Assembly: GCA_002269645.1 (NCBI GenBank)
Contig: NIVC01000027.1
Coordinates: forward strand, 941,600-1,005,599
DNA length: 64,000 nt
Reading direction: 5' to 3'
Source: Macrostomum lignano
Lineage: Eukaryota
Below the pieces are notes generated by a model. That model was not told the origin of the DNA, did no database searches, and worked only from the letters and a program-made list of their open reading frames with translations. Shown here one piece after another: positions 22,701 through 64,000 of this stretch (position 1 is its first letter; the number at the start of each line of letters is the position of its first letter). The position numbers were made by a program, and so were the translations under genes.

Positions 22701-22841
22701 ATATCTACTTCTTGGACCAAGTGGGGTCATGCGATAATAATCAAATTGCTGCCAACCAGGCCACTGTTCTAACCAAGCTGAAAATAAAAAAATCAATTAA
22801 AAACGAGAAAAAAGCAAAACACAAAAAGGTACGTCAGAAGG

Positions 22842-25695: not shown

Positions 25696-25748
<53 letters not shown>

Positions 25749-25751
25749 CTA

Positions 25752-25788
<37 letters not shown>

Positions 25789-25791
25789 CTA

Positions 25792-25877
<86 letters not shown>

Positions 25878-25879
25878 TC

Positions 25880-25912
<33 letters not shown>

Positions 25913-25915
25913 CTA

Positions 25916-26008
<93 letters not shown>

Positions 26009-43129: not shown

Positions 43130-43368
43130 ATGACTCGAGGGCAGCTCGGCAGTTTCACTCAGCAAAAGTCATGCCGGCCAGCAATACTAAAGACGGCAGC
43201 TATCAAGCGCCAATGCCCAACCAGCCCTCCTGGCAGTTCGTCGGAGTCTGGCACGGCGACCACAGCGCACGGCACAGCAGCACCGTGCCTGCTGATGGCC
43301 CGAAGGCAACAACGTCAGCGCCTTGTTCAACAAGCTGGAGCAGCTGGAGGCAGCCCCACTACGACTAG

Positions 43369-43408
<40 letters not shown>

Positions 43409-43411
43409 TAG

Positions 43412-43452
<41 letters not shown>

Positions 43453-43455
43453 TAG

Positions 43456-43516
<61 letters not shown>

Positions 43517-44842
43517 GTCTGCCTGTCTGTCTGTCTGTCTATCTGTCTGTCTGTCTGTGTGTGTGTGTCTGTCTGTCTGTTTGTCATTATCTAAAGCTAA
43601 CCTGAATCTGCTCCACACGCAGATGTATTTTTGGTGGATGCGAAACTTCTCTACGAGGGCAAGTGCACAAAAAAGAGCAGAAATCAGCCCAGCAAAAGCC
43701 GTCGCCCGTGCAGCAGTCAGAGCTCACCGCCAACAATCTCTGCGCCGAAGGCACGACCACCCCCGCCGCTGCAGCCGCCAGCGATGCGGCGGGATTGAAT
43801 TCAACCTCCTCCTCGTTTGAGGACGCCAGTCAGGCGAGGAACTCGCACTACCGCGACCCTAGTCCTCTTCGCCCCGGCCCTCGCCACCGCATGCTGGCTG
43901 GACAATCCAGAAGCGACGATGACTATGATGACGAGGAGAGCGAGGAGACCAGGAAAGCACGAATGTCTTCGCTGGCTCTGAAGAAGCAGTTCATCTACTA
44001 TGAGGGCAAAATGAAAACTGTTCTGGTGCAGCTGTGGCCCGATGCGGTAGGGTTTTAATGCATTGATCGGCCTTAGTTTATTTCACGTACATGCACTTGT
44101 CTTCTTGACTTGCAACACATCTTCCTTTCTTCTATTGTCCGGTCCTGTCAAATGTTTACTTGTTTTCGTAAGGCTTGTCTTCCTAAATGTTTTCGTATTT
44201 TTTCTTGTCCGCTTTTCAGTTGCTTAATCTTACCTGACCGTACAACAGCTAAGTTTGTTCTGTGGTCGCTGGACTAATTAACTAGCACTTGACTAGCTTC
44301 CTAATTCCTTCAACTCAGATAAAACAGATGACAGGCAGCTCAAAGGATGAACATGTCTGAATCTCGCGCCATTCGGTGCTTGACTGGCTGACAATGTATT
44401 TTGTTGCTCTTGTTGCTGTGCAAAAAAATCAGGAATATGAGCGCCCAATTTATTGTTTTTCCTTAAACCAAGTCTTTATCCATGTCAGGTCACACGATCG
44501 ACCACCTGTCTCCCGCACCCTCAGAACCGAATTCCGTTGCACGAGCGGCACCGCCTTCAAGACCCGATGAAAAAACACTACGGCCGGCTTTCCCAGCGAG
44601 CTCGACTACTCAAAGAATTCGAGAACAACAAGCGCAAACAGCCGCGTGAGATTGTGGAAGTGCCGCTACTGCCGCGACGAATGCAGCAGGAGGCGAAGGT
44701 GCGACTAATGGCCTGGTACCAGCCTATCAGCCTGACCTTGGCTGAGCCAACCGGAGCTGCAACCACTGCTGCTGGCCCTGCCGCTGACGCCCAGGCCTCA
44801 GCAGAGCCTGTCAACTCAACAGATAATAAGCATACACGATGA
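43130..44842 (+). CDS. Uncharacterised low-complexity protein (~338 aa), predicted 3 exons
   Basis: Exons 43130-43368, 43623-44046 and 44489-44842. The junctions AG|gt...(GCTAAC branch)...cag|A and GCG|gtaggg...cag|GTC keep one open frame. No recognisable domain. Confidence 0.6.
43369..43584. repeat. Interrupted (TCTG)n microsatellite filling intron 1 of the orphan gene
   Basis: Begins at the GT donor; TCTTAGTG, TTTG, TCTA and CCTG interruptions. Confidence 0.96.
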
Positions 44843-46274: not shown

Positions 46275-46549
46275 TACTCAGCAACATTAAAAAGTCGCCA
46301 CCTTTGAGAGTGCGCAGTAAATTCTAACTCAGTATTGACTTTTGAGTGACGCAACTTGCGCCACGCGAAGCAGAGTTTGGACTGGGTGAAGAGGGATCGG
46401 GAGGAGCAGAGGGCGAAGATTGGATGTGTTGAAGCTTCCGCCCGGTTTTCATTGTTTTTTTCAAGCATTTTTAATGTCAAAATGGTTGGCCAGGGGATAG
46501 ACACTGCTCACTGGGTCAAAGGGTGGCGACTTTTTAATGTTGCTGAGTA
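46275..46549. mobile_element. Tc1-related MITE, copy 1
   Basis: TIR TACTCAGCAACATTAAAAAGTCGCCACC with TA flanks; homologous to 59692-59956. Confidence 0.88.
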
Positions 46550-46626
46550 TATCGCTTCATTTATTATTGGTAAGCTATTTGCTTTTAAGCTATTCGACAT
46601 GTGATTTTTTAACTAAAACAAACTGT

Positions 46627-46906: not shown

Positions 46907-48326
46907 TACGTTTTTTGGGAGGAGTGTCTTGGAACTTGTTCGACCTGCTGGCTGCTGACGCTCTTATTAAATTATTAAATGTTCAATTTACCTGGCCCTG
47001 CCTCGCCCCCTTCTTTCACTGTGCACCGCTTTATTTATTGATTGCATCAGGGCCAATTAACTGATAAGAAAATATTCGTAGCTGTGTGCACCCCACTGGA
47101 CAGACAGATAACTACTTGATTTGAATTGCGTAACCAGACGAGTGGGTAAGCAATAAAATTCTGGATGCTGCTGGCAGACAGCTTTCCCTTTAGCTAGTTT
47201 AACTTATAAAAATCAGCTCTTGAGTTTTGTCTGCAGTACAGTACACACAGTCGCTCATCGATCCAGCATTCTTTTTGGGCTAAATAACTGGAACCATAGA
47301 CATGACAGACCAATCAGCCAGTGTATTTTCTTTGGAATTATTGGCTTAGAAAGTTCTAACGATTGAAGAGTAGGCCACAGACAAGTTGGTCTCTTATTTA
47401 AGTACGAGTTCTTTATATTCTTCCCTGTCACTGAGCTTTAGAATTTTATTTGTTTGCCATATCTCTGATGTGTATTTTGAGTTAAAAGAGCTGCAGCAAA
47501 AAAGTGTCATCCGTCAATTAACCAACCAGTCGCAAATGCTGGACGAGTGTCATTTTCATTATCCGACAAAGGATAGGCACCTAAGAAGGCTAATCTAAGG
47601 TACGTGGCGGGGCTATTTTGATTGAAATATGAAAATTCAGAATCTAAAAGTACTTTTTAAAACTTTTTCGGAAAGGGGTAGCAAAGCAATGTAGCAAAGC
47701 ACAGCTGAACTTTAGAAGAATAGTTATTAAGAAGATTCTTGTACCATCTGAATTGAACAATCTTGTACGAGCTATTTTCTGCCATAGATAGGATGTAGAT
47801 AAGATGCAGAAACATATTTTGATGAACTATATAATCTAAAATTGGTGTTTTTAAAGCATTTAAAGTCCTATTATGTCATATTACGATATATCGATCATTT
47901 CTCAAATTTCTCGCTTTTTTCAGTTAATGGCTTTTCTCTCAATATTGAATGCTTTCGCTCATTAGAGCTTTCGCAGTTGTGGGCTCTCAAGCATTGCATT
48001 GAATTCAAGCAAGATAAATGTCAAGGGACAAAGCTGAATTTTATTTGTCTATGGTCTCAAAGCCTGTCCCTGCAGCATTTAAGTTAGTCAAGAAGAACAA
48101 GAAGCCAGCTTAAAAACCAAAAAGTAGCTACTGAGCTAGCTGAAGTTGAAATCCAAATCTTCGGTCTCCTCAATTTCGACCAAAGACAAAAGTCTGCATC
48201 TGTATTTAGTCACAATAAGTAACAGCCGGGAAATTTGAAGCCTGTGTGAGCTTTCTGTGTGAGTTTGTGTGAGCTTTTAAAGCGCACACATCAGAAATTA
48301 ACGGCAAGAATCATATCGCGTGAATG

Positions 48327-48818
48327 AACACAAGCTCACACAAGCTCACACAAGCTTACACAAGCTCACACAAGCTCACACAAGCTCACACAAGCTCACA
48401 CAAGCTCACACAAGCTCACACAAGCTCACACAAGCTCACACAAGCTCACACAAGCTCACACAAGCTCACACAAGCTCACAAAAGCTCACAAAAGCTCACA
48501 AAAGCTCACAAAAGCTCACAAAAGCTCACAAAAGCTCACAAAAGCTCACACAAGCTCACACAAGCTCACACAAGCTCACACAAGCTCACACAAGCTCACA
48601 CACGCTCACACAATCTCACACAAGCTCACACAAGCTCACACAATCTCACGCAAGCTCACACAATCTCACACAAGCTCACGCAAGCTCACACAATCTCACA
48701 CAAGCTCACACAAGCTCACAAAAGCTCACACAAGCTCACACAAGCTCACAAGCTCACACAAGCTCACACAAGCTCACAAAAGCTCACACAAGCTCACAAA
48801 AGCTCACACAAGCTCAAG
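48327..48818. repeat. 10-bp minisatellite (CAAGCTCACA), ~49 copies
   Basis: Tandem units read directly. Confidence 0.98.
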
Positions 48819-49742
48819 CGTATGTTAGCTCAGTACTTTGTAGTATTACTTTGTAGCATTCAGTTACTATGCAGTTTGTTTAACAGCTTCAAACTTCAAC
48901 TCTTCGACTTTCATATCTGCATGCAGGTAGCTTTTAACCTGCAGAATTGATCGGCATAATTAGTGACACGGGTCATTCTTTCTGGAGGAAAACTGACTGC
49001 GAAGCTGATCGTTGAAGAAACTGGTGACAGAAAAAAGAAATTCAGGACTGCAAAGTGGCGAACCAGGTAAGTTACCATGGTTGCTCAAATCATGCTTTTA
49101 TTGGTGATATAATAAGCTGTTTAAGAAGCCCAAATTTATCAGTATCAATTTAAGCCAATGCAAACATTACGGGTAAATGAAGAACTGGGTGTGTTCCAAG
49201 AGTTTTTATTAGATAAGATCATTGTTTACTTTTTTTACCTGTGGCTTGTTTGATTTATTGCAATAATAATGATTACCTGCCCTAAAACCGGAGGAAACGA
49301 ATTGACATTCAATATTTAATGTTTTTGTAACTCTTTTGATATACAGATTACAAGTACAAAACTTTTAATAGCCGTGAACAAGCGCATTTACGTTTACACT
49401 ATGGAAATATTTATAAAAATGTGCTTTACGCGAAGATTTTTGCAAACAAAAAAGCAAAAAATGTTACTTGTCTTATTTTCATATGCCAGTCATTATTAAT
49501 TCTTAATCTTGAATTTAAAAACGTGAAATCGTCATGAATTGTCCGGGATGATTACCCGTCTAATGGCCTGCTCAGCTGTCGTAAATGATGGCCCAGCCAG
49601 ATTAGTTAAAGTTGCTGTCAGGCGACTGACGGATGCTGACAACTGCCTGCTCAAGTCTGCGGAATTAAAGCGGAAATGGGCCGCTAAAGAAACACCCAAA
49701 GCCTGAACCAAAACTTTTGGCCTAAACCTTACAGACGGCTAT

Positions 49743-52700
49743 TCACTCACCAATAGTTTTCAGCCGTTTAGTTCGATGCTTCCTGGGTGCTAAAATATTG
49801 CGAAGACCTTCAACAATGTAGCTCGCCAGCTGCTGATCCGGATCTTCGTTGTCTGTCCTTGACTTGCTCAAACCGATGCCGTGGTTGATGACAGCCACGA
49901 AGATGTTCATCAGCACCAGAATAAGAAAGCAGACAAAGCCCAGATAGCAGAGTTGGTTAAGGATGTTCCGCTGCATAACGTTGCGAAAATCTGATGCCCC
50001 AAGGGCAGCGTTGCAGAGGTGCTGCAGAGTGGCGGGCATCGAGCTGAATTGACGGAGTTGAGAGCCCATGGAGAGGTAGAACAGGCAGGCAAAAGCAGCA
50101 AAAACCAGAGACAGCGGAGCAAGGTAGGCAACCAACTGAGTCAAACAGCAGCTGACTGTGGCGACAAGGTGCCTCAGGTGTCGGGTGAGCCTAGCCAGCT
50201 GAAGCAGCCGCAGCTGTAGCAAGAAGGTGGCGACAGCGAGGCAGTTGCAGAACTGCCGATCCAACTGCATCACAGCCTGTAGATTTGAGACGCTAGTAGA
50301 CGCCAAGCAACGGAGTAGCAGACAGACCCAGGCTATCGCTGCTAACACAAATGCCGCCAAGGCCAGGATGTTCCAGCCAGATGTAGCGAACACTTTAAAT
50401 CCGAGAGTCACAGCGGTGTACATTGAAGCTCCAATGCAGATAACGGTCACCAAAGCGGCCAGGCAGTCAGCGCAGAGGTGGACGATACCCACGACACCAA
50501 CGTAGCGACTGAGCGGTGCAGAGTCCATGTTCCAAGTCAACTCGCAGCCTCCGAAAGACTCACAGTTGATGGTGAAGACAGCGTAAGTGAACAGAGAGGC
50601 ATCTGGATAAAATAAGCTGAGTCCCAGCTTGATTTTCCTTGTGTTGGCATTCAGCCAATTGAAATCAGAGAGTGACTGCAGCATTTTGATGGTCGCATTT
50701 AAACTGGTTGGCAGATCGATAGCTTCTGTAGCGTTGCTGGCATCGATTTGCGATGCAAAGGCTGCTGACTGCATCGAGTCGGCACTTTGAATTCGGCTCA
50801 GGCGAGGTGATCCAAGCAGGAAGCCCGCATTGTCAGCAATGAACCCAGACCGAGCCGACCTCTCTGTAGGAAAAAGCGCTGGAACGACAGACTCGGATAG
50901 ACAAGGCAGCACTGCCTTGGCAACGCTGGCTGACTGCAGACAGGACAAATTGAGATGATTCAAGAGGCTGCTGTGCAACCGAAATGCTCGAGTGTCGACA
51001 GCGCCTGTACTGGCGAGACAAAGCAGAGCAAACTGTAGAAGGCTCAGACCGGCTTGCAGCCCATGGCAAAACACTGCCTGCTTTTCTGGCTGCGGTTTCT
51101 TCTGCAGCTCGCTTAGGTAGCAGACGCGACCTGCAATTTGAAATGGAGAACAATGTGATTCTCCTGTCTACATTAAGCTATTCTCACTCACATACGTACA
51201 TGAGTTATCGTCTTCGTCGATCTCCATCACCCTGACGCGCTCCGAATTTTTTACGTCGCTGTCCTTGCGCATCACGATGACAAATATGAATCCAATGAGG
51301 ACTACCTTCATGGGCTGGATGAGGAAGGCCGTTTCCAGAAACGAAAGAATGAAGCAGAGCAGCCACTTTTGCGACTTCTCCTGCCCCCAATCCATTGCGT
51401 AGAAAACGATAAAGACTCCTGATACAATGATGGTGCTGAGCGCTATGAACCACCCAATAAACTGACACCAGTAAGGAAGCTGAACTGGCTTAGTTGTCTC
51501 TTTTAGAGGCTGAATGGGGGTGCACTCCAGGCTGTCCCACTCGATTGCAGATTCATCAGATTCGCTCTGAAATAGGTAAACGAAATCTTTTTGCGTATCT
51601 TGTTAAACATACGATAATTTTGGAGGAATACCTACCTCAATTACACTATAGATATTCTGCCTGTCCGAATGTTGGTGAGAAGGCTGCCAATCACCACTAC
51701 CAGAGTCCGATTCTTGATATTGCCTTGACTTTAGGAATATCAGCGTGATGGCAGCAGTGACGGGCACCACAATGAGTGCACTAATCACGGATACAATCAA
51801 AGAGCCCACTGACATGGTCAGCGGCCCAAGCTTGAGGTCCGACTGGCCTGCTGATATCGCATCGCCCACTCCGAAGAACATTGCATTCGTCACCATGGTG
51901 ATAAAGAGTGCGCTGAAGCAGGTGGTGAAGCGCTGCAGTCTGGAGAAATTTGTCTCAGTAGATCGCTTCATCACAGATACCCACAAGTGCTCGTCCTCGA
52001 GCTTGCGGCCAAAGTTGTGGCGGAGGAAACCCGGTGAACGTCTCAAATCGCCTTGTGAGGACAGATAAATTGATGCAGGTTGTCCGTCACCGGTCAGTGG
52101 GGTGTCCGGTATGAAGAAGTACCTTAAAATTAAATACAGATGGTACTTTTAAGTCTTTTAGACATCGTTACCAAAGTGATTTATTTATCAGGCTTTAGAA
52201 ACTACTCATACATGGCTCCAGTGACTGTGTCGGTGACAACGATCTTTCTCGGCATCCAGAGCTCCAATTCCTCATGCACGGCAGTCAGCTGCAGTTGCAG
52301 TTTGAGAATATCCCCTAGATTGCTGCTTGTCGTCATGCGGAACCGATCGATAGAACTGCTCTTAAAGCTCTGAAATTTCGTATCAATATGTGAATCTAGT
52401 TAAGCAAGTCTATAACAAAACGCTTTTTGAGAATAGCTCACCTGTCGGATTCCGTCGTCAAGAATTCTGGAACTTTCTGTGCTTTTTGTTCCAACAACAG
52501 TCATACAGATCTGTTGAATGCAGCAGTCAAGTTTTCCGTTGAATACATCGATAAGGTAGACCTGTGCCAGACTTTTGTCATCTATTAGTGGCTCGTAGGT
52601 AAACTGAAAGATTTTTTTTGGATTTTTATACTTTGTGTTCGCAGGAAAGTATTAAAAACAAAACAACTAACCAGTATTCTATCTCCCTTGTCAGCCCGTC

Positions 52701-55700
52701 TCAAAATGGCACCAATGGGAATGAAGATAAGCCACAAAGTTACCACGGTGGCGACGACTGCCGCGCTGTCGGCCAGCTTGCCCTGCCAGTTGCTGAAAAG
52801 ACTGCCAAAGTCGATGAGATTCGGTGAGACATTGAGACCAACACCAATGCTGCCAAGCAAATTGAATCGAAGGGAAACTCTGTTTGTATCCGCCACTTCT
52901 GCAAGCTGGCAGCTTTCTGGGCCCAGCAAAACCCACGAGGCCGCCAGAGCATCCCAATGCCTGCAGGACAGCTCAATGATTGAGAAGTTGTAAGCGACTG
53001 TGGGATCGGAGCAAGTCACGTGACCAGTCGGGTCTCTCGAGCAACCGTGACGCCTGACGCTGATGTAGTTGGTAGCTGATGCGTTTAGAAGTCCAGGGGT
53101 GATGAGAATTCGTGTTGACTCTTGTGAGTTAACAGACTTGTTACTGGGCAAGGTGAAGTTTAACAAGTGTTTTTGAGGATTAGGTGGTGTCCCTGATGCC
53201 ACAAATATGTCAAAAGTTTGCCCCTGCTGAAGTGGCTGCAGGAAAACTATCACCCGCTGATTGCTGTTTATGGAAAACGAGTGCTGAATCTGCAGCCATT
53301 TGTCCGACGGTGTCGCATTGATGCTGATTGGATCTGGCACGGACATGAGCAAAGAGGCCGCAAATGCTTGAGAGACAGCGGAACGCCTGACCCGAGAGGA
53401 TGTATTTGAGGGTAAACTTTGATCGCACAGTGTTTGGCGAGTTGTAAGTACACTGGATGCTACTGAGGCCGAGGACTCGTGCCATAAAAACGGGTTCTTG
53501 CGGGATAGAAGAGCCTTGATGCCTCCGTCATTGCTGCAGTCACTAGGGGGTGGCTCATCGATCTGTACGCTGCCCTGAGGCGCCTCGAAGCTCAAATTGG
53601 TACCTCGACTGCCCACTGCCGAGATCCAGTTGTTTGAAATCGCGTATTGATTTGAATCGGTGATTAAATCTTCGGTTATGCTGCTGATTGAGTCGATGGC
53701 TTTCTCAAGCACGGTACGCAGCATTTGTCTTGTTTCAGCGAGGCTGCTGTTGCAGCTTATGGACTCGCAGCTGCTGTTGTCAGCCAGCTCTGCCGCCCTC
53801 ATTGAGAGGCTGGATGCCAGCCAGATGTTAGATCCTGTCAGTACCAGGTCTAAAAGGGTAAATTTGCTCAAATTAGAGAACAGTCTTCACTATATTCATC
53901 TAATTCAGTTTTTTACTAACCTTCGGCCATGAGCGAACGGCCATCATTTGTCAAGTTGTGTCGCATTTCCTTGTACTTTAGTGAAACTTCTGCTAGCTTT
54001 CCGGAGCTGAGGTTCTGAACGGTGTTCGCGGGGGATGTGTTTCAAATTACTTAGAACATTTTGCTGGGGGCAGAGGCAGCGCCGATGATGTAATAAAATA
54101 AGCGAAGCATTTGAATCCCCCTGACACGTACATTCCGATGTTTAGACAGGAAATCTAGAGGTAAGTTGGCTTTGGCTCTCTGCCTATATTACTTAGTCTA
54201 AAATCTATTTGTTTTTTTACGAGTATAAGAAAGACTTACCCGCTTACTCATTCCCAACAAGTTATATGATTTCGTTATTATTTTTATTTTAAGAAATTTT
54301 TTGAAAACACAATTAATAACTAAATACCTGAGCTGTCATGTCTAGCTGAGTGACTCGATTTTCGGCGGCTCCACTTCTAAGCAGCTCACTAGTCTGCTCA
54401 AGTGAGTTGGTTGTGTTTACAGCAAACTGACTGACGATGCTGACGTAGCGAGTTCTGAGCTGAAAATTTTCAGATTGAAAGGAATATTTACAGATGCCGT
54501 ATATGTTTAAGCTGCTTGCTTTCATTCCTAAATCTGTCCTACCTGAGACATTTGTTCGGTGAAAAATTCCCTAAGCGACTGACTCGCATTGGCACTTTCG
54601 GCATCATCGTTACGCGAGTTCATAACTGACACCACGCAAATGAGAGTCGTGGAAGCTGCCTGCTGGTTTCCAGTGTCCAGGAATTTTGTAAGCTCGTCGT
54701 TTTCTCCATTGAAAATTGAGCTGATGTTGGTGATTAGCTGTTCAGCAGGTACAGGTGGCGGAAACACCTAAAGTGTCAGTAAGAAGTTCAAGTGCGGTAG
54801 CAGGAACATTTCAGCAATACTCCAGATAAAACACCTACCTGCAGTTGAAATACGAAATTTCTTGAGTCTCCAAGGCTGTCGGAAACAGCCACGACAATCT
54901 CTTCCCGATATTCGTCGGTCTCTGATCCAACTGGAAAGAAAACCAGCGGCGAGGTCGATATGGAGCTGCTGAACAGCAAAATGCTGCGCCTGCTGCCTTT
55001 CTGGCGCACCCGGAACTCGTAGTTTAATTGACTGACTGTGACGTTAAACTCTTTCCAGTCAAAGCAGGAGATCTGAAACTTTGTCACCATTGCAAATCCC
55101 TGCAGCGGAGCAACAGTGCAGTTGCCTCCAGATGGTGCAATGTTCACGACGAGGGCGGTCGTTATTAAGGTATCTCCGTCACACCATTTGCAGGATCCTT
55201 GAACCGTCAAAAAGTAAACGCCACCCTCGATGAGGGAACTGCTGGGAATATCAATTAAAGATGAATTACCAGCAAATAACTTGCTCTGAGGTAAAGTATC
55301 AGTCGTGAGCCTTATTATCCAAGAAAATGTAACATTCGAGAATTTCGTTCCACAGAACTGAACACAAGAAACCTGATAAAGCAGCTCTCTCGAAGCCTTC
55401 ACTTTCTTGTCGCAGTTTTTGATGCAGCTGAAATGGAATGATTGTAATCAGAGATAATGAGCAGCAATACATGTCAGATTGGTAGCATATATTAACTCGG
55501 ACATGATATTTTCTACCTTATGCTTAGAATGGCCGCGGGCTGTAGCCGAATTAACAAATTCAAAATTGCGGCATCTTGGCGACTGTCTTTCTGGGCTGTG
55601 ACTCGAACGGCATAAGAGTGGTTTGGAAGCATGTGATAGGTGTTAATTTCTATGGTAGCTGCACTCCCACTATGGATGAGGCCGATACCATTTCCATAGC

Positions 55701-58700
55701 AGCCAGTAAAGACTTTGGAATTGGAAACTAATGGTGCAGTGATGTTCGGCAGCAGCATGTCAACTTTTGGAGGCTCCTCCAATCCATCTCTCCAACACGC
55801 CCAGTAAAATTTGAAGCCAGTAAGATTTCCCTCGCTGACATCAAAGTCGCGAGTAGAGTTTGCAACACTTAGGCTTAGCGTGCTGTTGTAAGCCGCAACT
55901 TCTGGCCCGTCGATACGGGACACCTTAATCGGCGTCTTGACAATGTTGATAGTCAGCTGTGAGGTTGACCACACTGGAGGCTGAACGCCCGACATCGATA
56001 CATTGAGTGACACTCTGTACTTTCCGTACCATAGACTAAGCCTCGAGATGTTGAAAGTAAACGAATCATGATATGACAAATGGTTCTGCTCATTTCCTGC
56101 CGAATCTTTTATTGACCAGGAACAAATTGTGATGGATGTTTTTGAGCAGTTTATGAACGGAAGGGCTTCGATGATTACATCGGATGACCTCATGATCTCT
56201 GGCGGGAGTTCAGTAGGGTCAGTGAGATTCACCAGGATTCCGTTGACAGTGAAGTTGATGAGCGGACGCTCGCAGTACCAGTCGTTGACAATGATGGAGC
56301 ACTGAGCCGTGTCGTTGCTAACATGGTTGAACGCCAAAGCAGTGGCTATATATTCACCGATTGCCGGATACGTATGCTGAAGATGCACTATCCGAGTATC
56401 ATAAGGTAGTTTAGTGAAATTGGCACCAACTCGCATACTATACGGTGCGCACAGATCTGCAGCACCGAAAGATTCACCAGAAGAGTTGTCACCAAAGTTG
56501 ACAACAAAGCAGCCGTGGGTGCCAAACCTGGCTATATTTAGGGTCATATAAGAAGCGTTAGTGTAGAACGCAGTACCGTTTGGCTGTAAATTTTCAATGA
56601 TGACGGCATCCAGCTCAATGAACACTGGCAGAATTTTTAGCCACGACGAGACCATATTGGAGCAGTTCACCGAAAAGTTCCAGGCTCCAAGCGCTTCGCG
56701 AGGGAAGCTGCGCTCGAACAAAGCAGATTCATTGAGTTGGGGAATATATAGATAGCCTGAGCCAAACTTTGAAAATCTGAACTGACAGTGAACATTTCTG
56801 TATGCTGGTCCACTTAAGCTGAAGTTGACAATTGCTGGAGTGTACAGCACTGTGTGCGGGTATCGAATTTCGACATTCGCAATAGTTTCCTGAACAACTA
56901 TTGGTCCGAACAAGAGCTCTACTATGCTGACCTGATTGTAGAGCAGTACTCTGACGGTGTAGTTCCCCGCGTCTGCATAGGTGTGATTTATAAATTGTGT
57001 GCTACCAAACAGAAGGGACATATTCTTTATATCGGAGTCGCCGAGATGTGTCACAACAAGGATATTTGAGCCTCGATCAAAGCTGAGTTTTAGACTGAGC
57101 TCACTGCCAGCCGGATGAGCCACTGGTCCAAAGACTCTTGCTCCTTGAATGCTTTGCTGACAGAATACAGTAGTATGGGTTTCTTCATAGCTCACCAGGT
57201 TTGAGCAGCTGAGCGTGAGATTCCAAGGTCTCGCTGTGATTTCAGCCTGGCAGGTGAAGTTCAATTCGATCGTGAGCGATTCCACATTCCATGTTCTGCT
57301 TTGCTTCCCGAATGTTGCATTGCACGAGGCGTTTGTAGGCATTCGCTGAAGAAAGCCAACTTGGGCAGTCAGGCCGAGTTGTGAGTCATTCACAAACGGC
57401 GGAGCAGACACTGTAAGGTTGCTTACTGGCTCTTGAACAATGACAATTGCTGATTGAGCTGCATGGGTGTGGAAATTCGTAGCAGTGACTTCTATCGTGT
57501 GAACTCCGGGACTCGAAAACAGAAGTGACAGGTTGAGCTGTGTGGGAGCATGCACTGACTGGTTTGAATTAATATCGAGTGTACTGCCGTTGCTAAAGCT
57601 GACCAGAAAATTTACGTGGGAGCCAGTTTCAGCTGAGATCATTAAATAACCAAACTGATAAGTTCGCAGCAGCTGTGAGACCTCCAATCGCAAGCCGGTA
57701 ATGTTTTGCTGCAGGATGACGTAGAGAGAATTATTTCTGACCGACAGGGCGTTCCAGCAGGAGACATTTAATAACAAAAATGGAACATCGGTTAGGAACT
57801 CTATAGGAACGAACAGTGGCTCGCTCCTCTTCAGAGTTAGATCCGTAAAATTCACTTCTAAATATTTTGTCTGAAGCAGACAGGAGTATTCTGTGGCAGA
57901 AATATCGCTGCCATACAGCATTCGAAATGTAAGGTTCTGTTTGACAGGCGCGGGAGTTTCTACAGCCGGAAGCGTTACGCTTAGAATGCTACTCAGATCT
58001 GGAACAACTTCTAACTCCAGCTGCTTTGAGACGAAACCAGCGTCGTTCCAAGCATCGCAGGAAACATTAAAGTGTCCAACGTGATCGGTAAAATCAAACG
58101 AAATAGACTGTATATATGACGCAAAGCTGTGCACGTGACCTGCTGTGTTCCAGTTCCAAACAACGGAACCAACTCTTTCGAATGTGACATTCGTTTGAAT
58201 TGCAGACCCAGATGACCAACTAAGCTGCAGTTGAACTGTTGAGTTAAATTCCAGAATCAGTTGTGTCAGAGATGAGCAGGAAAAGTTGGTTATTGGAGAG
58301 TCGCGGCAAGAAATTCTGTCTGCTAGAGAACTGCATCGAATATTGTTTGCTGGTACAGACTGGGTGTAAGAAGCGCCTGAGCCAATTAACAGTTCTGAGC
58401 ATAGCAGACTGAGCATGGGACACACAGTCTTCGACACGTTGAACATGTATTGACACGTCACAGTCGCGTTGTGGGTGAGTCCCTGTCGCTTCTCAGCCTC
58501 GTCACAAACTGCAGTCCTTAATGATGGCACACGGAGAGTTGAGTTTTCGTCTGTTAGAAATAATTGAAACTCAAAGTTTGTGCGATTTGTTCCAGCCGGC
58601 ACGGGCTCTACTGGAACTCCAGATTGCAGATAAAACGAGTGATCGACTACAAGCAAGGCTGGGTATTGTGACAGCCAACTGCCATTAGCCACGAAGGTTA

Positions 58701-61700
58701 ATGAGTTGGCCATGCTCACATCCGCATAAGGCGTACAGTTCAAGGAAATCGGAGTACATTGCAAGTTGTTTTCGAGCGCAAGGTCTTTGTAGCTCGCGTT
58801 GGTTCCAGCTTCAACTGTAACGCAGATGTAGCGCGATGCCTCGCAAACGCTCAGGTTCAGTACAATTTCGGTTGTGTTTATTCTGAAAGAGAAAATATTA
58901 ATGAAATTAACAATATTTTTTGGAATTTCTAAATAGATACTTACGGAACTAGCATTGCTGAGCCCCTGACGACTCCATTTTGTCTCACAGCTGCATCTCC
59001 ATCGCCAACCATCACTAGCATCACAGTGGTGTCTGCTGTAATACAGTCAGCTGTTTGAATCGAACAGTTGCTCCTTGATAGCACTGACTTAAGCACAAAG
59101 TTTGAGTCGGTATCCTGAACCTCAGCAATATCGTGAGGAGCAGCGTTAGTGGCAGTTACCTCCGCAGTGAGAGAGAGCTGGCCAGCGACACCTCTGGTAA
59201 TGACTGTCTGGAATGGTTTTAGCACCAGCGAAACATCTATTTCCGGCTGGCAAATGGGCACCACAAGCTCACAAACACAGTTGTCCCTCTCGTCTGCCTC
59301 CACAAAGGCTGCGTCAAGGTCAGCCGAGACGGTGATGCAAAGCCGGTTGATATCGAGGCATCGGCTTCCAGATGGAAGAACGATGGATCCGTTCAACTTG
59401 AGGTCCTCCTCCTGACCGATGTCCCATCCAGCACTGGCGGCACCTGATTTCACTGCGTGCATTTCGAACTGCGTCGCATTTGGTGCCTCTGCACCGATGA
59501 AGAATCTTAAATTTGGTTGAGTCGCTGATGGAAAGCCACTGACTCCGCTTACGGCTTGTAGACGCAGCTGCCATGTAACCGTTGATTGCTCATGCCTGAC
59601 GAGATATGGAGCCTGTGCTAACGAGCTTCTAATTGCCATGTCTACCTCTGAAAATTAAGGTTTAATTGCTTAAATTGCGCAAAAATATCTATACTCAGCA
59701 AAATTGAAAAGTCGCCACCCTTTGCCCCAGTGAGCAATGTCTTTTTACCAGTGTCTATCATCTGTCAAACCATTTTTATAGTTAAAAATGCTTGAGAAAC
59801 AATGAAAACCGGGCGGAAGCTTCAATCCATCCAATTCAGTCCTCCGCTCTTCCCAACCCCTCCTCACCCAGCCCAACTTTGCGTCGCGTGGCGCAAGTTA
59901 CGTCACTCAAAAGTCAATACCTCTCAAAGGTAACGACTTTTCAATGTTGTTGAGTACACTAAAGCTTGTTATTTGAATCAAAGGTTAGTTAGAAATGCTA
60001 ACCTGGCTTGCAGCGACCTCTGTGCCATCTGTATCCGATTCGGCAGAGACAAGCCAAAGTTCGGTTGCCCTGCCACGCTTTGCAGACTGTGTGATTCGAG
60101 AGAGTGCAGCTGGCATCGGAGAAACAGCCCGAGTCGTATGCAGCAGCTGAAGTAACATTGATGAAGGTCGTGATTGATTGGTTTGACGGGTAATTCGTTA
60201 TGCAGTAAACCGAATTCGATGCTCACCTGTTTCAATTTCAGTTAGCTGCAAAATTCTCATTTGCACCGCAGAGATCTCTTCTCCGCCAGCCCATTGCATG
60301 ACATCATCAGCTCCATCCGTTCCAGATCCGGTCATTTTCGGTGCTGCAGAATCGCTTCCAAACCACCATCCGCTGCCAGAAGCGATTGCTGCGTCCGCTT
60401 TGTCCCAGAGTCACGGGCTGAGAAGCTGCTGCCATTCAGAGCCTGAAATGCAGAGCCATTGAAGTCACCTCCATCGCAGTCAGAGACTCTGAGCATGAAT
60501 CTATCAACTTTCTGAGCCACTCTGAAGACAAAGCATTCGATGTATCTGAACCGGCCGTCCTGAAGCCAGGCATCGATCCTAAGACGCCACTGAGACACCA
60601 GAGACAAAAGTGAAATAGCGTTGAGTCCAGTCCATGATGAGTTAGACTCAGACTCATTGAATTGACTGCTCCAGAAGCCGCCAGAGTATCTCAAAATTGA
60701 TTGGTTCATTTGAAATTTCGTGTCGAAATTCCAGTACACGACAGGCCAGTTTCCAAAGCAGCGCACGTGGCGCGAAAGAATGCTGAGGCTGGTTTTGTTG
60801 ACGCAACTGAACTCCCCCAGATCCAGGACGCATCCAAAAAGCTCAAGCTTGATGGCCACACGAGGTTGGGGAAATGCTCTGACGTGACGAGTGACAATGA
60901 TTTTGCGAAACTTCAGCAGGTAAGGCTGACCTTGAGCATCCAGCGGAGATTGCTAAAATAGAAGATGATAAGCTCTGGATGAGTAAACAGCAAAGAAATG
61001 AACCATATACTCGCCTTGCACTAGCACACAATAAAATTGTCATTACGCTGTTAAAACTGACGCTTTCCGTCACGAAACTTCCGGTACTTTGATCTAAAAT
61101 ATCCACTTTCAGCTCAGTGAAAGTTTTAGGCTGTCCAGACAAATCAGTAATTCGAAGACCAGGGCCCAAAACGGACATAGCCACTACCAAAACTGGTTGG
61201 CTGAATTTGATCTGCAGGTAAGTTGATTGAACGAGGATGCAAGAGGCTGAGGATGCAAGGGATAGAAACATCTATGGCAACATTCCTACTCCACTACATA
61301 CCGTAACTTCTGTAGCGCTGACAGCAGCATCAGCAACCACAGCAGGTTGAGTCATTCGGATTCGATCAATGGGTACTGTTGAGTGTGTGCTATCAGATCG
61401 CACTAGAGCTTGCGCTACTCCGGTGCTGAGAAGGTCCATTTCAGAACAGAGATCTGCAAGTAAATACAGAAAATCTATACAATTGCTTATTTCATATACT
61501 ACGCTAGTAGTAAATTCATTACCTAAGCACAGTTGTTCAATAAGAAACGTGCGGCTTGCTTCAGGCCCACTGGAGTTGCTGTGATTGGCATATTCACCCG
61601 ACAATACAATTTCCGCATCGGATGCCATCTGAATGGAGTGGCACAAAACGGGATCGATTTGACAGGACACGATTGCCTGAGGCAGATCAAAACTGACTGC

Positions 61701-61786
61701 TTTTTCCAATGTTGCTGACATGGAAGTAGTCACGTTGTACTTTATGTTGTACTGAGGTTCCCTGCACTGCCGGCTCAATCGGGAAC
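49743..61786 (-). CDS. Polycystin-1-like (PKD1L/REJ family) receptor-channel, ~3,400 aa, at least 17 exons; 5' signal-peptide exon not located; one frameshift
   Basis: Exons: 61786-61523, 61453-61302, 61211-61062, 60952-60227, 60146-60003, 59647-58945, 58882-55517, 55427-54839, 54767-54543, 54459-54328, 54014-53921, 53849-52672, 52603-52442, 52369-52212, 52122-51636, 51479-51200, 51130-49743. All junctions are GT-AG and phase-consistent except for a 1-nt deficit at ~60405. The protein has PKD repeats, REJ (CIKNC, VNIAPSGGNCTVAPLQGFAMVTKFQISCFDW), GAIN/GPS (CRHWD...PNLIDF), TM1, PLAT, DEHLWVSV/FSRLQR, QPMKV and a polycystin channel domain (WLNANTR, LMNIFVAVIN). Confidence 0.88.
59692..59956. 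mobile_element. Tc1-related MITE, copy 2 (inverted relative to 46275-46549), in a PKD1-like intron
   Basis: TIR TACTCAGCAAAATTGAAAAGTCGCCACC. The interior (CCGGGCGGAAGCTTC, GCGTGGCGCAAGTTACGTCACTCAAAAGTCAATAC) is the reverse complement of copy 1. Confidence 0.88.
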
Positions 61787-62049
61787 CTAAAATGCGTAGA
61801 AACCTTTTGGTAAAATTTACTGCTACGAGTATTGCCTTTTTAAAACGCAAAAATACCACATTGAAAACTATGTTTTGTGTTGCGGCGAACGCTGCCCGTG
61901 AAACTAGTGTTTCATGTTTCTATCGCAGCAAATGTGTTTATTAGAGGCCGCTTACGCATGAGTAGCTGGATATGCAGCTATTTCATTTCGTTAAATAGAA
62001 CTTAAAGTATCCGTATCCTTGTATGAGTTCGTATATCAGTGTTAGAGTC

Positions 62050-63400
62050 AGTATTTTAAATTTCTTTAGGAAAAAAAAACAAATGTGGAAAAAAGCCCAG
62101 CTAAGAAACGCTGGCCGAAAGAACTATGACCGCGTATATAGCAGTCATGGAGACACCACTGTGATAAATAAAAAGGGCTTAAGGATTGGCCTTGTTCATT
62201 CAATGACTGGTCCGCAGGCCACCAGATGTAGCTCGTCTTCCACCGCCTCTTGCATCAACTTTCTCTTCACTCTCTATTGCAGTGGTTTTCTCATATGACC
62301 GCCGATACATTAGCGTCATTCAATTTTTGAAGCTGCATCTAATCATCTCCTGACAATGTGCCGCTGCTAGGTTTCTGGGGTAGACGCGACGGCCATAGAG
62401 TGCCTGTTGCTTGCAAATCTCCGGATCTACCTCGCTCAGCTGCTTCAGCTTCACCTTCAGCCACCTGATTTAGGTGCAAAGCACCCATTATTTTGAGCCA
62501 AAGCTTCCGTATCACTAGCAACGAGCTACCTTCATTTGTCAGTGACAAGCACGTCAGGAACTCCGTAGTTGAAATATGTCCGACGCAGCACCTTAATAAC
62601 CAGAGTCTGTTTGGCATCAGCAATGACTAGGAAGTTGCTTCCGTCCAGCTGTCCTAAGTAAGCATGTAGTCTTGACCATGTCGCTTTTGGTACCTGTCAA
62701 GGCTTCAATGCAGGTTTCTTTGATGGTCTCATTTGCTGGCATGTCCTGGACTGTTTCACTCAAATATCGAGAAAAGCCACTGTGCAGGTATCTGATAATC
62801 TGTGGTCTCAATCTCACTGGCGTAAGAATACGAGCTACGCTGATCCAACAGCAGCACATGTTCCTTGCAGCTCAGCCTACTTTCGCAAATTGCTCCGGTA
62901 GGTCCTTGCCCTTTTGCATTGTATGTATAACCTCTTTGAGTTCCTGGTCTGCCGTTAACCCTTGCTCCATTCGATCCACAGTGAGTGGCAACTTATCCGA
63001 AAAAGCGAGGTCCAGAGCAGCTATTTTGCTATTTTGCTCACGACTTCAGTAGCCGATTTGTCCCTTCTGAAACAACCATCCGTAGGCAATCTTCAGAGGG
63101 CATCCGCATGAGGTATCTCATGTTTTTTACCCTTGATGCTGTACTGGTACACTGACACCAGATCTTCCGAAGATCTTTGGGCGAAAAGACGATAAACTTG
63201 AGTGGTTTATGATCCGTCACAATCTCAAAACGTCTGTAGGCCTGTTTAGCTTCTTGGAGCACCAGACCACATCTTTCGATTGGGTCTTCACGGATCCACC
63301 AGCTGCTTTGAAAGTCGTCACTGCAGAAATCTTCCCAAGTTTTTAAATATCGCTCTTGAACGCTTAGTCTTGAGTTGAGTTCTACCATTAGGGACACTTT
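62050..63400 (-). mobile_element. Degenerate Ty3/Gypsy pol remnant (RNase H to integrase)
   Basis: RRFEIVTDHKPLKFI (RNase H TDHKPL motif) at ~63185-63240, RILTPVRLRPQIIRYLHSG (integrase Zn-binding region) at ~62780-62835, and LHLVACGP at ~62215. Multiple stops and frameshifts. Confidence 0.75.
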
Positions 63401-64000
63401 AACGATGAGATATTCTAGTATCTACTTCCTCTATGGAGTAGATCAAGCAAATAGTATATTAGAGGCTTTTTTTATTTACCACAGTAGAGTTTAGGCTCAT
63501 GCTATATATTAACTGTGGCCAGCTTTTATTAGCCGTGTTTTTCCTCTAGCTCTCTACCTCACTTCAACCAAGTGCATGGCCTTTATGGCCAAACAAACAA
63601 ACGTACAAGATTTTCATTTTTGGTATATAGGATATAAATAAAATAAAACATTGGCATTGAAATTGATTATCCTAAAGTTCACGATACACCACTTACCATT
63701 GGCTACTTCGCATACCACATAGGCCGAAACAAAGTCACAGCTCGCAGAAACCCAATTCTCAGCCTTAGAGACGAAGTCGCGCAATCTTGATGGGCTTGCG
63801 GATAGCCATAAGCCCACTGTTTCCACGAGAGTTCCGATCCAGTCAGCTCGTCAGTCCATTCCGATCGGGTTGAGTTGCTCCGTCGAACTCCGAGATGAAC
63901 GCTGAACTGCTCAGGCAGTGCAGTTGGCCGGTGCTTTCTGTGATAGGCAATTCCAGTATTGATATTTTAAATATAAATTGAAACTTTTAGCTAGATTAAT

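What the first reader, a model, noticed from the sequence alone, without database searches (positions are those of the whole stretch)
58945..61786. Polycystin-1-like receptor capped by PAN + discoidin (F5/8C) + fibrinogen-related + EB/EGF modules
Seen after splicing, in order: a PAN-like segment (AIVSCQIDPVLCHSI); a discoidin domain split over three exons (LCSEMDLL...EVT|IKFSQPVLVVAMSVLG...|...IVTRHVRAFPQPRVAIKLELFGC); a FReD (WTGLNAISLL...WRLRIDAW...FSARD...SGWWF...VQMRI); an EB/EGF-like module (GCFSDASC...VC...CLCRIGY...C); then a ~350-aa unknown domain, PKD repeats, REJ, GAIN, PLAT and the channel domain. Known: described polycystin-1 ectodomains use LRR, WSC, C-type lectin, SUEL or EGF modules, while FReD and discoidin domains are invertebrate pattern-recognition and glycan-binding modules. 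Inference: this is an architecture I do not know from the literature. It could couple glycan or microbe recognition to a ciliary PKD2 Ca2+ channel (chemosensing, mating or immunity), and it shares a PAN module type with the secreted cluster in the same window.
Basis: partly seen in the sequence, partly recalled or inferred. Interest (0 to 1): 0.78.

Follow-up and report, generated by a model that had tools for sequence, protein, structure and literature searches.

The report
Polycystin-1-like receptor with lectin-module head
This is a large invertebrate polycystin-1-like receptor/channel gene whose outer tip carries sugar-binding-type modules (a real fibrinogen-related domain, probably a discoidin domain); the layout already exists in predicted annelid and flatworm proteins, and here it is interrupted by two one-base frameshifts.

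Summary
They join in phase to a PKD1-like gene. My model has 16 GT-AG exons (61786 to 49746) and 3,375 codons, and it is open after one single-base repair.

- **Body confirmed by Pfam:** REJ, PKD repeats, Polycystin_dom, PKD_channel and borderline PLAT, with 11 hydrophobic segments.
- **FReD:** confirmed by Pfam and by fold (pLDDT 88.7; ficolin and angiopoietin matches, TM 0.75). As assembled it carries a 1-nt frameshift at 60404-60406.
- **EGF-like module:** fits the EGF-2 pattern. Pfam EB is below threshold.
- **Discoidin:** moderately supported. Pfam is negative, but a custom HMM, a colinear match to an annelid discoidin domain, and its position all agree.
- **PAN:** not supported by any sequence test.

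An upstream C-type-lectin exon (about 63697-63960) also carries a frameshift. The gene's 5' end lies outside the window. The "unknown domain" is three tandem modules of about 145 aa.

The architecture is not unique. A Dimorphilus gyrociliatus protein (6,071 aa) has CTLD, PAN, F5/8C, FReD, EGF, then the PKD1-like body, colinear with this gene. Macrostomum lignano models carry FReD, EGF and the PKD1-like body. I found no paper describing it. Verdict: a new variant of a known kind, of modest interest.

The parts
63697..63960 (-). C-type-lectin-like exon (C-terminal two thirds of a CTLD). It lies outside the finding, runs towards the window end, and has an apparent 1-nt frameshift at about 63773-63777. 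Its phase-1 donor (AAT G|gtaagt) matches the acceptor at 61786.
   Evidence: sequence and three-frame translation. Pfam Lectin_C E=0.0016, 19.6 bits (below the 22.6 cut-off), profile positions 39-106 of 107, on the frame-repaired peptide.
61787..63696 (-). Intron of 1.9 kb between the CTLD exon and the first cap exon. It holds stop-ridden ORF fragments that look like retroelement pol by eye (FEIVTDHKPL, GVPDVLVTDK).
   Evidence: The Pfam scan of the fragments was negative, so the retroelement reading is unverified.
61523..61786 (-). It occupies the position held by a Pfam PAN_1 domain in the annelid homologue but has no detectable PAN similarity.
60830..61453 (-). Discoidin-like domain, about 141 aa between flanking Cys, over three exons (61453-61302, 61211-61062, 60952-60830).
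   Evidence: Pfam negative. Custom F5/8C HMM: 15.1 bits, 0 of 300 shuffles reach it. It is the best hit among 1,393 six-frame ORFs, E=0.0018, next best 1.2. Smith-Waterman against the Dimorphilus discoidin domain: z=4.0, 3 of 1000 shuffles, colinear over about 100 aa.
60227..60829 (-). Fibrinogen-related domain (FReD), complete in fold. The assembly has a 1-nt deficit at the GGG run 60404-60406. Without repair the upstream frame stops at 60335.
   Evidence: Fibrinogen_C 29.3-31.8 bits, cut-off 22; gap-free alignment across the repair site; pLDDT 88.7; ficolin, ANGPTL and fibrinogen matches, E about 5e-14, TM 0.75.
60003..60146 (-). EGF-like six-Cys module (CFSDASC...C...CLCRIGYRWHRGRC).
   Evidence: EGF-2-type pattern match. 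Pfam EB only E=0.012-0.2. The module aligns with the equivalent one in M. lignano P0003.
57600..59647 (-). Three tandem modules of about 145 aa, each ending C-x6-C-x~18-[DN]N-x1-3-C-x6-9-C (model residues about 480-910). It spans exon 59647-58945 and the start of exon 58882-55517. The lower coordinate is approximate.
   Evidence: Homologous stretches occur in P0002, P0003, P0004, P0005 and P0008. There is no Pfam family.
54390..57600 (-). PKD (Ig-like) repeats and the REJ domain (exons 58882-55517 in part, 55427-54839, 54767-54543, 54459-54390).
   Evidence: PKD 1.4e-14 (3 stretches; 4). REJ 2.9e-57, profile positions 6-447 of 452.
52672..53849 (-). Stalk with a degenerate GPS-like motif (CRHWDALAASW...SLRFNLLGSIGVG; no HL-T) and the first transmembrane helix.
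   Evidence: no Pfam GPS. The motif is conserved with P0046 and P0008; hydrophobic segment at model residues 2495-2513.
52212..52603 (-). PLAT/LH2 domain over two exons (52603-52442, 52369-52212).
   Evidence: PLAT E=3.4e-4, 21.7 bits against a cut-off of 23. The homologue P0003 scores 5e-9.
49746..52122 (-). Transmembrane helices 2-11, the polycystin (TOP) domain and the channel-like region (exons 52122-51636, 51566-51200, 51130-49746). The stop codon is at 49746-49748.
   Evidence: Polycystin_dom 1.2e-5, PKD_channel 4.7e-14, Ion_trans 1.9e-9; hydrophobic segments.

Best explanation
The locus encodes one very large type-I, 11-TM polycystin-1-like (PKD1/REJ family) receptor and channel-like subunit. 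It belongs to a spiralian subfamily whose ectodomain starts with lectin-type modules.

Order in this window: CTLD (partial, off-window); an 88-aa Cys-containing linker at the PAN position; a divergent discoidin-like beta-sandwich; a complete fibrinogen-related domain; an EGF-like module; three Cys-motif modules of about 145 aa; PKD repeats; REJ; a GPS-like stalk that probably does not self-cleave; TM1; PLAT; TM2-11 with the polycystin domain and a channel-like region.

Shown here: the gene structure, the domain identities, and colinearity with annelid and flatworm homologues.

Inferred: like other PKD1-family members (sea-urchin REJ proteins, Platynereis PKD1-1, planarian pkd1L genes), it most likely sits in the membrane of a ciliated sensory cell or a gamete, pairs with a PKD2-type subunit, and converts an extracellular stimulus at the long ectodomain into cation or Ca2+ signalling. 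The lectin-type head would provide glycan or matrix contacts.

The two single-base frameshifts (FReD exon and CTLD exon) are more likely assembly deletions than real lesions. That is not settled.
For: Gene structure:
- A model of 16 exons, all GT-AG, with introns of 62-540 nt, gives 3,375 codons with no stop after one 1-nt repair.
- The donor of the CTLD exon and the acceptor at 61786 are both phase 1.

Domains:
- Pfam on the model: REJ 2.9e-57, PKD 1.4e-14, PKD_channel 4.7e-14, Ion_trans 1.9e-9, Fibrinogen_C 9.1e-7, Polycystin_dom 1.2e-5, PLAT 3.4e-4.
- Eleven hydrophobic or S4-like segments follow the GPS-like motif.
- The FReD fold model has pLDDT 88.7 and matches ficolins, angiopoietin-like proteins and fibrinogen at E about 5e-14, TM 0.75.

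Homologues:
- phmmer of the cap against 1.84 billion representatives finds M. lignano A0A1I8JIH8 (2,608 aa) aligned over FReD, EGF and the first Cys module in a single stretch.
- tblastn of A0A1I8JK18 against the window is colinear from 60775 to 50025.
- Dimorphilus CAD5126282.1 is colinear with model residues 129-3375. Pfam reads PAN_1, F5_F8_type_C and Fibrinogen_C in that order just upstream of its EGF-like module, and further F5/8C and Lectin_C domains in its head.

Frameshifts:
- Both need +1 nt.
- The repaired FReD aligns without gaps to 17 other FReDs across the repair site.
- Both halves contribute to the Pfam and fold matches.

Functional analogies come from the literature: PMC1934368 (SpREJ lectin domains), PMC6294549 (Platynereis PKD1-1/PKD2-1 in ciliated mechanosensory neurons), PMC11448475 (planarian pkd genes in sensory cells).
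Against: - As assembled, the head is out of frame with the body and would end at 60335. A second frameshift lies in the CTLD exon. Both fall in roughly the first 10% of the coding sequence, which is unexpected for randomly placed errors.
- The 5' end, start codon and signal peptide are outside the window.
- There are no transcript data, so exon connectivity rests on splice phases and on predicted homologues from other species.
- The PAN position has no recognisable domain.
- The FReD lacks the P-domain disulfide (Cys replaced by Ala and Ser), so lectin activity is doubtful.
- PLAT is just under Pfam's cut-off and GPS is undetected.
- Nothing here addresses expression, a partner subunit or a ligand.
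Confidence: 0.72

Rival explanations
1. The frameshifts are real. The gene, or at least its lectin head, is a recently inactivated pseudogene or a null allele in the sequenced individual. The intact 3,000-codon body reflects only the youth of the lesion.
For: There are two independent 1-nt frame breaks, at 60404-60406 and about 63773-63777. Both lie in the head. About 9 kb of downstream coding sequence, the Kv4-like exons and the PCMT ORF in the same window show none. The runs involved are short (GGG, TT), not the long homopolymers typical of modern assembly errors.
Against: There are no stop codons or further frameshifts in 3,375 codons. Both halves of each broken domain still score as the domain. 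Both lesions are single-base deficits, the usual direction of long-read consensus errors. The sequencing technology is unknown.
Confidence: 0.22
2. The cap exons form a separate upstream gene for a secreted multi-lectin protein (CTLD, X, discoidin, FReD), and the PKD1-like gene starts downstream of them.
For: As assembled, the upstream reading frame ends with a stop at 60335, inside the FReD exon. Short FReD-only and FReD-plus-fragment models exist in M. lignano (P0001, P0047, P0002).
Against: That stop exists only because of the frameshift. The FReD continues in the other frame and its fold is complete. The FReD exon ends at a good donor whose phase matches the EGF exon. No Met with a signal peptide is seen downstream. 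FReD, EGF and the Cys module lie in a single alignment with a 2,608-aa M. lignano PKD/REJ protein, and the discoidin-to-channel order is colinear with a single Dimorphilus protein. The short M. lignano models are evident fragments.
Confidence: 0.06

Closest known systems
Dimorphilus gyrociliatus DgyrCDS14438 (CAD5126282.1 / UniProt A0A7I8WDL7), an uncharacterised predicted protein of 6,071 aa
   Same: It is colinear with model residues 129-3375 (phmmer 714 bits). It has the same module order: a weakly supported CTLD-like segment, then PAN_1, F5/8C, FReD, EGF-like, Cys-motif modules, PKD, REJ, a GPS-like NLFGSIGAG motif, PLAT and the channel region.
   Different: It carries a much longer head with at least four further F5/8C and two Lectin_C domains, and an extra NedA/F-type-lectin-like domain between FReD and EGF. 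Identity is only 20-28%. Its PAN and discoidin domains are canonical, whereas those in the window are degenerate.
Macrostomum lignano PKD1-like models A0A1I8JK18, A0A1I8JIH8 and A0A1I8JK13, with fragments A0A1I8G3L2 (FReD) and A0A1I8GE25
   Same: These are the closest relatives found: 37-42% identity in the GPS-PLAT-TM region and 39% in the FReD. They have the same FReD, EGF, Cys-module, PKD, REJ, PLAT and channel order.
   Different: Their FReD is too divergent for Pfam in the long models. What lies upstream of their FReD is unclear; there is only an IKMDLF motif reminiscent of a discoidin C-terminus. The window's organism is not Macrostomum, since its PCMT is only about 53% identical.
Sea-urchin REJ proteins (SpREJ1-3) and human PKD1, PKD1L2 and PKD1L3
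   Same: They belong to the PKD1 family: lectin-type modules at the tip (CTLD, SUEL, EGF, WSC), PKD repeats, REJ, GPS, PLAT, and 1-11 TM segments with a channel-like region in some members (PMC1934368).
   Different: None is described with FReD or discoidin modules. Canonical members have a cleavable GPS (HL-T), which is absent here.
Platynereis PKD1-1 and planarian pkd1L genes
   Same: They are spiralian PKD1-family members expressed in ciliated sensory neurons and required for hydrodynamic or mechanosensory behaviour (PMC6294549, PMC11448475). They are the best functional analogy.
   Different: No lectin head is reported for them.
Ficolins, FREPs and angiopoietin-like FReD proteins
   Same: The fold of the 200-aa domain matches (TM 0.75). 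The FS.xD...GWWF core and the invariant Trp and Phe residues are kept.
   Different: In the window the domain is an internal module of a membrane receptor, not the C-terminal head of a secreted oligomer. It lacks the P-domain disulfide. Its ligand-site residues were not assessed.

Membership tests
PKD1 / polycystin-1-like (REJ) receptor family | REJ domain | tested here: met
   Pfam REJ E=2.9e-57, profile positions 6-447 of 452.
PKD1 / polycystin-1-like (REJ) receptor family | PKD (Ig-like) repeats in the ectodomain | tested here: met
   Pfam PKD E=1.4e-14 to 3.4e-16, 3-4 stretches.
PKD1 / polycystin-1-like (REJ) receptor family | GAIN/GPS autoproteolysis site (HL-T) before TM1 | tested here: not met
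   There is no Pfam GPS hit. The motif reads SLRFNLLGSIGVG, and the same non-canonical motif occurs in the M. lignano and Dimorphilus homologues. The position is conserved but cleavage is unlikely.
PKD1 / polycystin-1-like (REJ) receptor family | PLAT/LH2 domain after TM1 | tested here: inconclusive
   Pfam PLAT gives 21.7 bits against a cut-off of 23, E=3.4e-4. The region is colinear with the PLAT of homologues scoring 5e-9.
PKD1 / polycystin-1-like (REJ) receptor family | 11 TM segments with a polycystin (TOP) domain and a C-terminal channel-like region | tested here: met
   Polycystin_dom 1.2e-5, PKD_channel 4.7e-14, Ion_trans 1.9e-9. The hydrophobicity scan shows the expected segments.
Fibrinogen-related domain (FReD) | Profile match above the curated threshold | tested here: met
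Fibrinogen-related domain (FReD) | FReD fold | tested here: met
   The AF2 model has pLDDT 88.7 and pTM 0.85. The top 50 Foldseek hits are all FReDs, E about 5e-14, TM 0.72-0.77.
Fibrinogen-related domain (FReD) | Uninterrupted reading frame | tested here: not met
   There is a 1-nt deficit at 60404-60406 and the upstream frame stops at 60335.
Fibrinogen-related domain (FReD) | P-domain disulfide (C-A...GGWW...C) and an intact ligand/Ca2+ site | tested here: not met
   In alignment A1 the window has A and S where most FReDs have the two Cys. The Ca2+ and ligand residues were not evaluated.
Discoidin / F5/8 type C domain | Profile match (Pfam F5_F8_type_C) | tested here: not met
   No hit at E<=10 on the whole segment or on four sub-fragments. 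The PDB phmmer search found nothing.
Discoidin / F5/8 type C domain | C-terminal signature (..R[YF]VR..P..W...IALR.EL.GC) and flanking Cys pair about 140-150 aa apart | tested here: met
   A custom HMM built from five Pfam-validated domains gives 15.1 bits, with 0 of 300 shuffles reaching it. It is the top hit among 1,393 window ORFs at E=0.0018. The Cys residues in ..DLCSEMD.. and ..ELFGC lie 141 aa apart.
Discoidin / F5/8 type C domain | Homology to a canonical discoidin domain at the equivalent position of a homologous protein | tested here: inconclusive
   Smith-Waterman against the Dimorphilus F5/8C (Pfam 6.7e-19) gives score 42, z=4.0, 3 of 1000 shuffles, colinear over about 100 aa. The single-sequence AF2 model was too poor to judge (pLDDT 36).
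PAN / Apple domain | Profile match or conserved Cys framework | tested here: not met
   Pfam PAN_1 and PAN_4 give no hit at E<=10. The custom PAN HMM scores -0.4 bits, and 202 of 300 shuffles score at least as high. Smith-Waterman against the Dimorphilus PAN gives z=0.0. Only C-x6-C is present where PAN has C-x3-C-x5-7-C...C. The only evidence is positional: a PAN_1 sits there in the annelid homologue.
EGF-like / EB module | Six-Cys EGF pattern C-x-C-x2-[GP]-[FYW]-x4-8-C | tested here: met
   The regex matches CLCRIGYRWHRGRC at model residue 464. Pfam EB gives only 12-16 bits against a cut-off of 24.3, so EB membership is not met.
C-type lectin domain (upstream exon) | Profile match | tested here: inconclusive
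   Lectin_C gives 19.6 bits against a cut-off of 22.6, E=0.0016, covering profile positions 39-106 of 107. The domain is truncated by the window end and needs a 1-nt repair.

The most novel reading that the evidence does not exclude
An old, spiralian-wide subfamily of PKD1-like receptors (annelid, flatworm and this organism) carries a multi-lectin head (CTLD, PAN, discoidin, FReD). The subfamily could work as a glycan-sensing polycystin, so that a carbohydrate ligand from a mate, prey, microbe or matrix would directly tune a PKD1/PKD2-type cation channel in ciliated sensory cells or gametes. No paper describes such a subfamily.
Probability: 0.2. Interest if true: 0.6.

Novelty: new variant of a known kind. 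Interest (0 to 1): 0.3.

Why it matters
PKD1-family proteins are thought to be ligand- or force-sensing partners of PKD2 channels, yet natural ligands are known for almost none of them. Sea-urchin REJ and egg-jelly glycans are the exception.

A conserved subfamily whose tip is built from four different glycan- or adhesion-binding module types would be a convenient place to look for defined ligands of a polycystin, for example with a recombinant head on glycan arrays. It would also test whether lectin heads are a recurrent solution in this family.

The present locus adds only a third species to an architecture already in the databases. It is a weak exemplar because its head is degenerate and frame-broken in the assembly.

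Tried and rejected
- **Word-indexed search.** The 712-aa cap against 5.8 billion proteins gave nothing. The full 3,375-aa model timed out.
- **Pfam on the PAN-like and discoidin-like pieces.** Scans of whole segments and six sub-fragments at E<=10 were negative. The PDB sequence search found nothing for the discoidin-like piece and one chance-level match (E 0.4) for the PAN-like piece.
- **AF2 of the PAN and discoidin region.** The single-sequence model had pLDDT 36 and was unusable. Its Foldseek hits were generic jelly-rolls, all with E above 0.001, and I did not use them as evidence.
tblastn found none. My PAN HMM found nothing in 1,393 ORFs. Pfam found no PAN in the large ORFs at 2.8-11.7 kb.
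- **BLASTP of the window head against the N-terminus of M. lignano A0A1I8JK18.** Not significant.
- **Identifying the organism from the PCMT gene.** It is 50-58% identical to PCMT of all animals, including M. lignano at 53%. The organism is therefore not Macrostomum and remains unidentified.
- **Look-up of the contig encoding P0003.** Not on record.
- **Retroelement reading of the 1.9-kb intron.** Pfam was negative on five ORF fragments.
- **A small intron instead of a frameshift in the FReD exon.** Rejected.
Full report
**What is at the coordinates.** The window is eukaryotic DNA with short GT-AG introns, and the feature lies on the minus strand. I placed six cap exons at 61786-61523, 61453-61302, 61211-61062, 60952-60227, 60146-60003 and 59647-58945, each with a canonical donor and acceptor and with compatible phases. 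Using tblastn of a homologue and a splice-site scan, I continued the model downstream. The result is 16 exons from 61786 to the stop codon at 49746-49748, with introns of 62-540 nt and 3,375 codons.

Inside exon 60952-60227 the frame changes between FSARDSG and DKADAAIASGSGWWF.
- As assembled, the upstream frame runs into a stop at 60335.
- Everything downstream, about 3,000 codons, is in another frame.
- Adding one G to the GGG run at 60404-60406 restores a continuous ORF with no stop at all.
- No intron can explain it, because the only GT...AG pair would give 17 nt.

**The gene continues upstream.** Exon 61786 begins at a phase-1 acceptor (ttttag|GT) and has no start codon or signal peptide.
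- On the same strand at about 63960-63697 lies the C-terminal two thirds of a C-type lectin domain...EWTDELTGSELSWKQWAYGYPQAHQDCA / FVSKAENWVSASCDFVSAYVVCEVAN.
- It ends at a strong phase-1 donor that joins in frame to 61786.
- Pfam gives Lectin_C E=0.0016, just under threshold for this truncated piece.
- It too needs a 1-nt insertion, at about 63773-63777.
- The 5' end of the gene is therefore outside the window.

**Domain identities, downstream part.** Pfam on the full model gave:

| Family | E-value | Note |
|---|---|---|
| REJ | 2.9e-57 | essentially full length |
| PKD | 1.4e-14 | 3 stretches |
| PLAT | 3.4e-4 | 21.7 bits, cut-off 23 |
| Polycystin_dom | 1.2e-5 | |
| PKD_channel | 4.7e-14 | |
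| Ion_trans | 1.9e-9 | |

- A hydrophobicity scan shows TM1 before PLAT and the expected further segments, including an S4-like helix.
- GPS is not detected. The motif reads SLRFNLLGSIGVG instead of C-x-C-x-HL-T, and the same variant is present in the homologues. Self-cleavage is therefore unlikely (inference).
- The polycystin-1-like body is confirmed.

**Domain identities, cap.**
- **FReD is confirmed.** Fibrinogen_C scores 29-32 bits against a cut-off of 22. With a 31-sequence alignment, AlphaFold gives pLDDT 88.7 and pTM 0.85. Foldseek returns only FReDs (M- and L-ficolin, ANGPTL2 and ANGPTL6, FGL1, fibrinogen gamma) at E about 5e-14 and TM about 0.75 over about 200 columns. The domain lacks the usual P-domain disulfide.
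- **The EGF-like module is supported.** The six-Cys module matches C-x-C-x2-G-Y-x6-C. Pfam EB is only sub-threshold.
- **Discoidin is moderately supported.**
  - Pfam and PDB sequence searches are negative.
  - Single-sequence AlphaFold failed, with pLDDT 36.
  - An HMM I built from five F5/8C domains, recalled from memory and then validated by Pfam, scores the segment at 15.1 bits. Shuffles reach at most 2.5 (0 of 300).
  - That segment is the single best hit among all 1,393 six-frame ORFs of the window (E=0.0018, next best 1.2).
  - The HMM match is confined to the C-terminal signature LKFRKIIVTRHVRAFPQP--RVAIKLELFGC.
  - Independently, the segment aligns colinearly over about 100 residues with the canonical discoidin domain that occupies the same position in the annelid homologue (z=4.0, 3 of 1000 shuffles).
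  - I regard discoidin as probable but divergent.
- **PAN is not supported.**
  - Pfam is negative.
  - My PAN HMM score lies within shuffles.
  - There is no similarity to the annelid PAN (z=0.0).
  - The Cys spacing is not canonical.
  - Only position speaks for it.
- **The "unknown domain"** is three tandem modules of about 145 aa, each ending C-x6-C-x~18-[DN]N-x1-3-C-x6-9-C. They have relatives in P0002-P0005 and P0008 but no Pfam family.

**Relatives elsewhere.**
- A full HMMER pass of the cap against 1.84 billion representative proteins gave 44 hits. The best are Macrostomum lignano UniProt entries.
  - A FReD fragment, A0A1I8G3L2, is 39% identical (Pfam Fibrinogen_C 4.5e-17).
  - A 'REJ domain-containing' fragment begins in the FReD.
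  - The 2,444-3,185-aa models A0A1I8JIH8, A0A1I8JK13 and A0A1I8JK18 carry PKD, REJ, PLAT, Polycystin_dom and PKD_channel. Their N-terminus aligns in one stretch to the window's FReD, EGF and first Cys module.
- tblastn of A0A1I8JK18 is colinear with the window from 60775 to 50025.
- A search with the GPS-PLAT-TM region found only M. lignano proteins, at 34-42% identity.
- The hit P0008 turned out to be Dimorphilus gyrociliatus CAD5126282.1, 6,071 aa.
  - It is colinear with model residues 129-3375 (phmmer 714 bits).
  - Pfam reads PAN_1, F5_F8_type_C (6.7e-19), Fibrinogen_C (5.5e-13) and a NedA-like galactose-binding domain in that order. The stretch starts with a CTLD-type segment that Pfam supports only weakly (UL45-like, E 0.0016) and ends in an EGF-like module read from the sequence, immediately upstream of the common body.
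  - Four more F5/8C stretches and two Lectin_C domains lie further upstream.
- The order seen in the window (CTLD, X, discoidin-like, FReD, EGF) is therefore the conserved order of a spiralian PKD1-like subfamily. The X segment sits where that subfamily has PAN.

**Organism.** The PCMT gene in the window (41721-42398, plus strand) is only 50-58% identical to PCMT of any animal, including M. lignano at 53%. The source is not Macrostomum. It is an unidentified metazoan whose PKD1-like gene is closest to flatworm sequences.

**Are the frameshifts real?**
- For assembly error:
  - Both are single-base deficits.
  - Both broken domains still score on either side of the break.
  - The remaining 3,375 codons are intact.
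- For real lesions:
  - Both fall in roughly the first tenth of the coding sequence.
  - About 9 kb of downstream coding sequence and the other genes in the window show none.
  - The runs concerned are short.
- I put about 0.2-0.25 on real inactivation. Only reads or cDNA can decide.

**How it most likely works (inferred).** By analogy with the family, the protein would be a membrane receptor whose long ectodomain senses an extracellular cue and which signals with a PKD2-type subunit.
- Sea-urchin REJ proteins carry CTLD, EGF and SUEL modules, and their lectin domains are implicated in gamete recognition (PMC1934368).
- Platynereis PKD1-1 and PKD2-1 are required in ciliated collar-receptor neurons for a hydrodynamic startle response (PMC6294549).
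- Planarian pkd genes are expressed in ciliated sensory cells (PMC11448475).
- The head would supply glycan, matrix or adhesive contacts. Whether it still binds sugar is doubtful for this particular gene, given the degenerate PAN position, the divergent discoidin domain and a FReD without its P-domain disulfide.

**Comparison with what is known, and novelty.** Four literature searches found no paper describing FReD or discoidin modules on a PKD1-family protein. The architecture is nevertheless already present in public protein databases for an annelid and a flatworm, as uncharacterised predictions. I classify the locus as a new, lectin-headed variant of a known kind, represented here by a degenerate and frame-broken copy. 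Interest is modest.

Noticed in passing
window 63697-63960 (minus): This is a C-type-lectin-like exon upstream of the finding. It joins in phase to exon 61786, carries its own apparent 1-nt frameshift at about 63773-63777, and shows that the gene's 5' end lies beyond the window edge.
   Followed up: partly
window 62300-63420 (minus), inside the 1.9-kb intron: Stop-ridden ORF fragments have motifs that look like retroelement RNase H and integrase by eye (RFEIVTDHKPL, GVPDVLVTDK). The Pfam scan of five fragments was negative, so this stays a guess.
   Followed up: partly
window 59690-59956 (intron of the gene) and 46275-46551: An interspersed repeat of about 270 nt sits in the 355-nt intron between the EGF exon and the next exon. 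It has a 77%-identical inverted copy about 13 kb away.
   Followed up: partly
model residues 480-910, window about 57600-59647 (minus): Three tandem modules of about 145 aa have a conserved C-x6-C...[DN]N..C...C ending and no Pfam family. They are shared with M. lignano and Dimorphilus PKD1-like proteins, with a 'Kangiellaceae MAG' protein (MEE4247217.1, probably eukaryotic contamination) and with a Logan contig protein.
   Followed up: partly
window 33432-34544 and 26357-27247 (minus): These are exons of a Shal/Kv4-type voltage-gated K+ channel (Shal-type N-terminus, BTB_2, Ion_trans). The gene is a neighbour on the same strand.
   Followed up: no
window 41721-42398 (plus): A single-exon protein-L-isoaspartate O-methyltransferase ORF (225 aa) is only 50-58% identical to any animal PCMT in the database. 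The source organism has no close sequenced relative there.
   Followed up: partly
Only a weak Laminin_G_3 match appeared at 10746-11741. They have no similarity to the cap exons.
   Followed up: partly
window about 18000-30000, 43190-43820 and 48300-48950: There is a strongly G-skewed, repeat-rich stretch (GC skew up to 0.6). Coding-looking tandem repeats also occur (TDRQ... and KLTQAHTSSH... in ORF translations). They are probably satellites and were not analysed.
   Followed up: no
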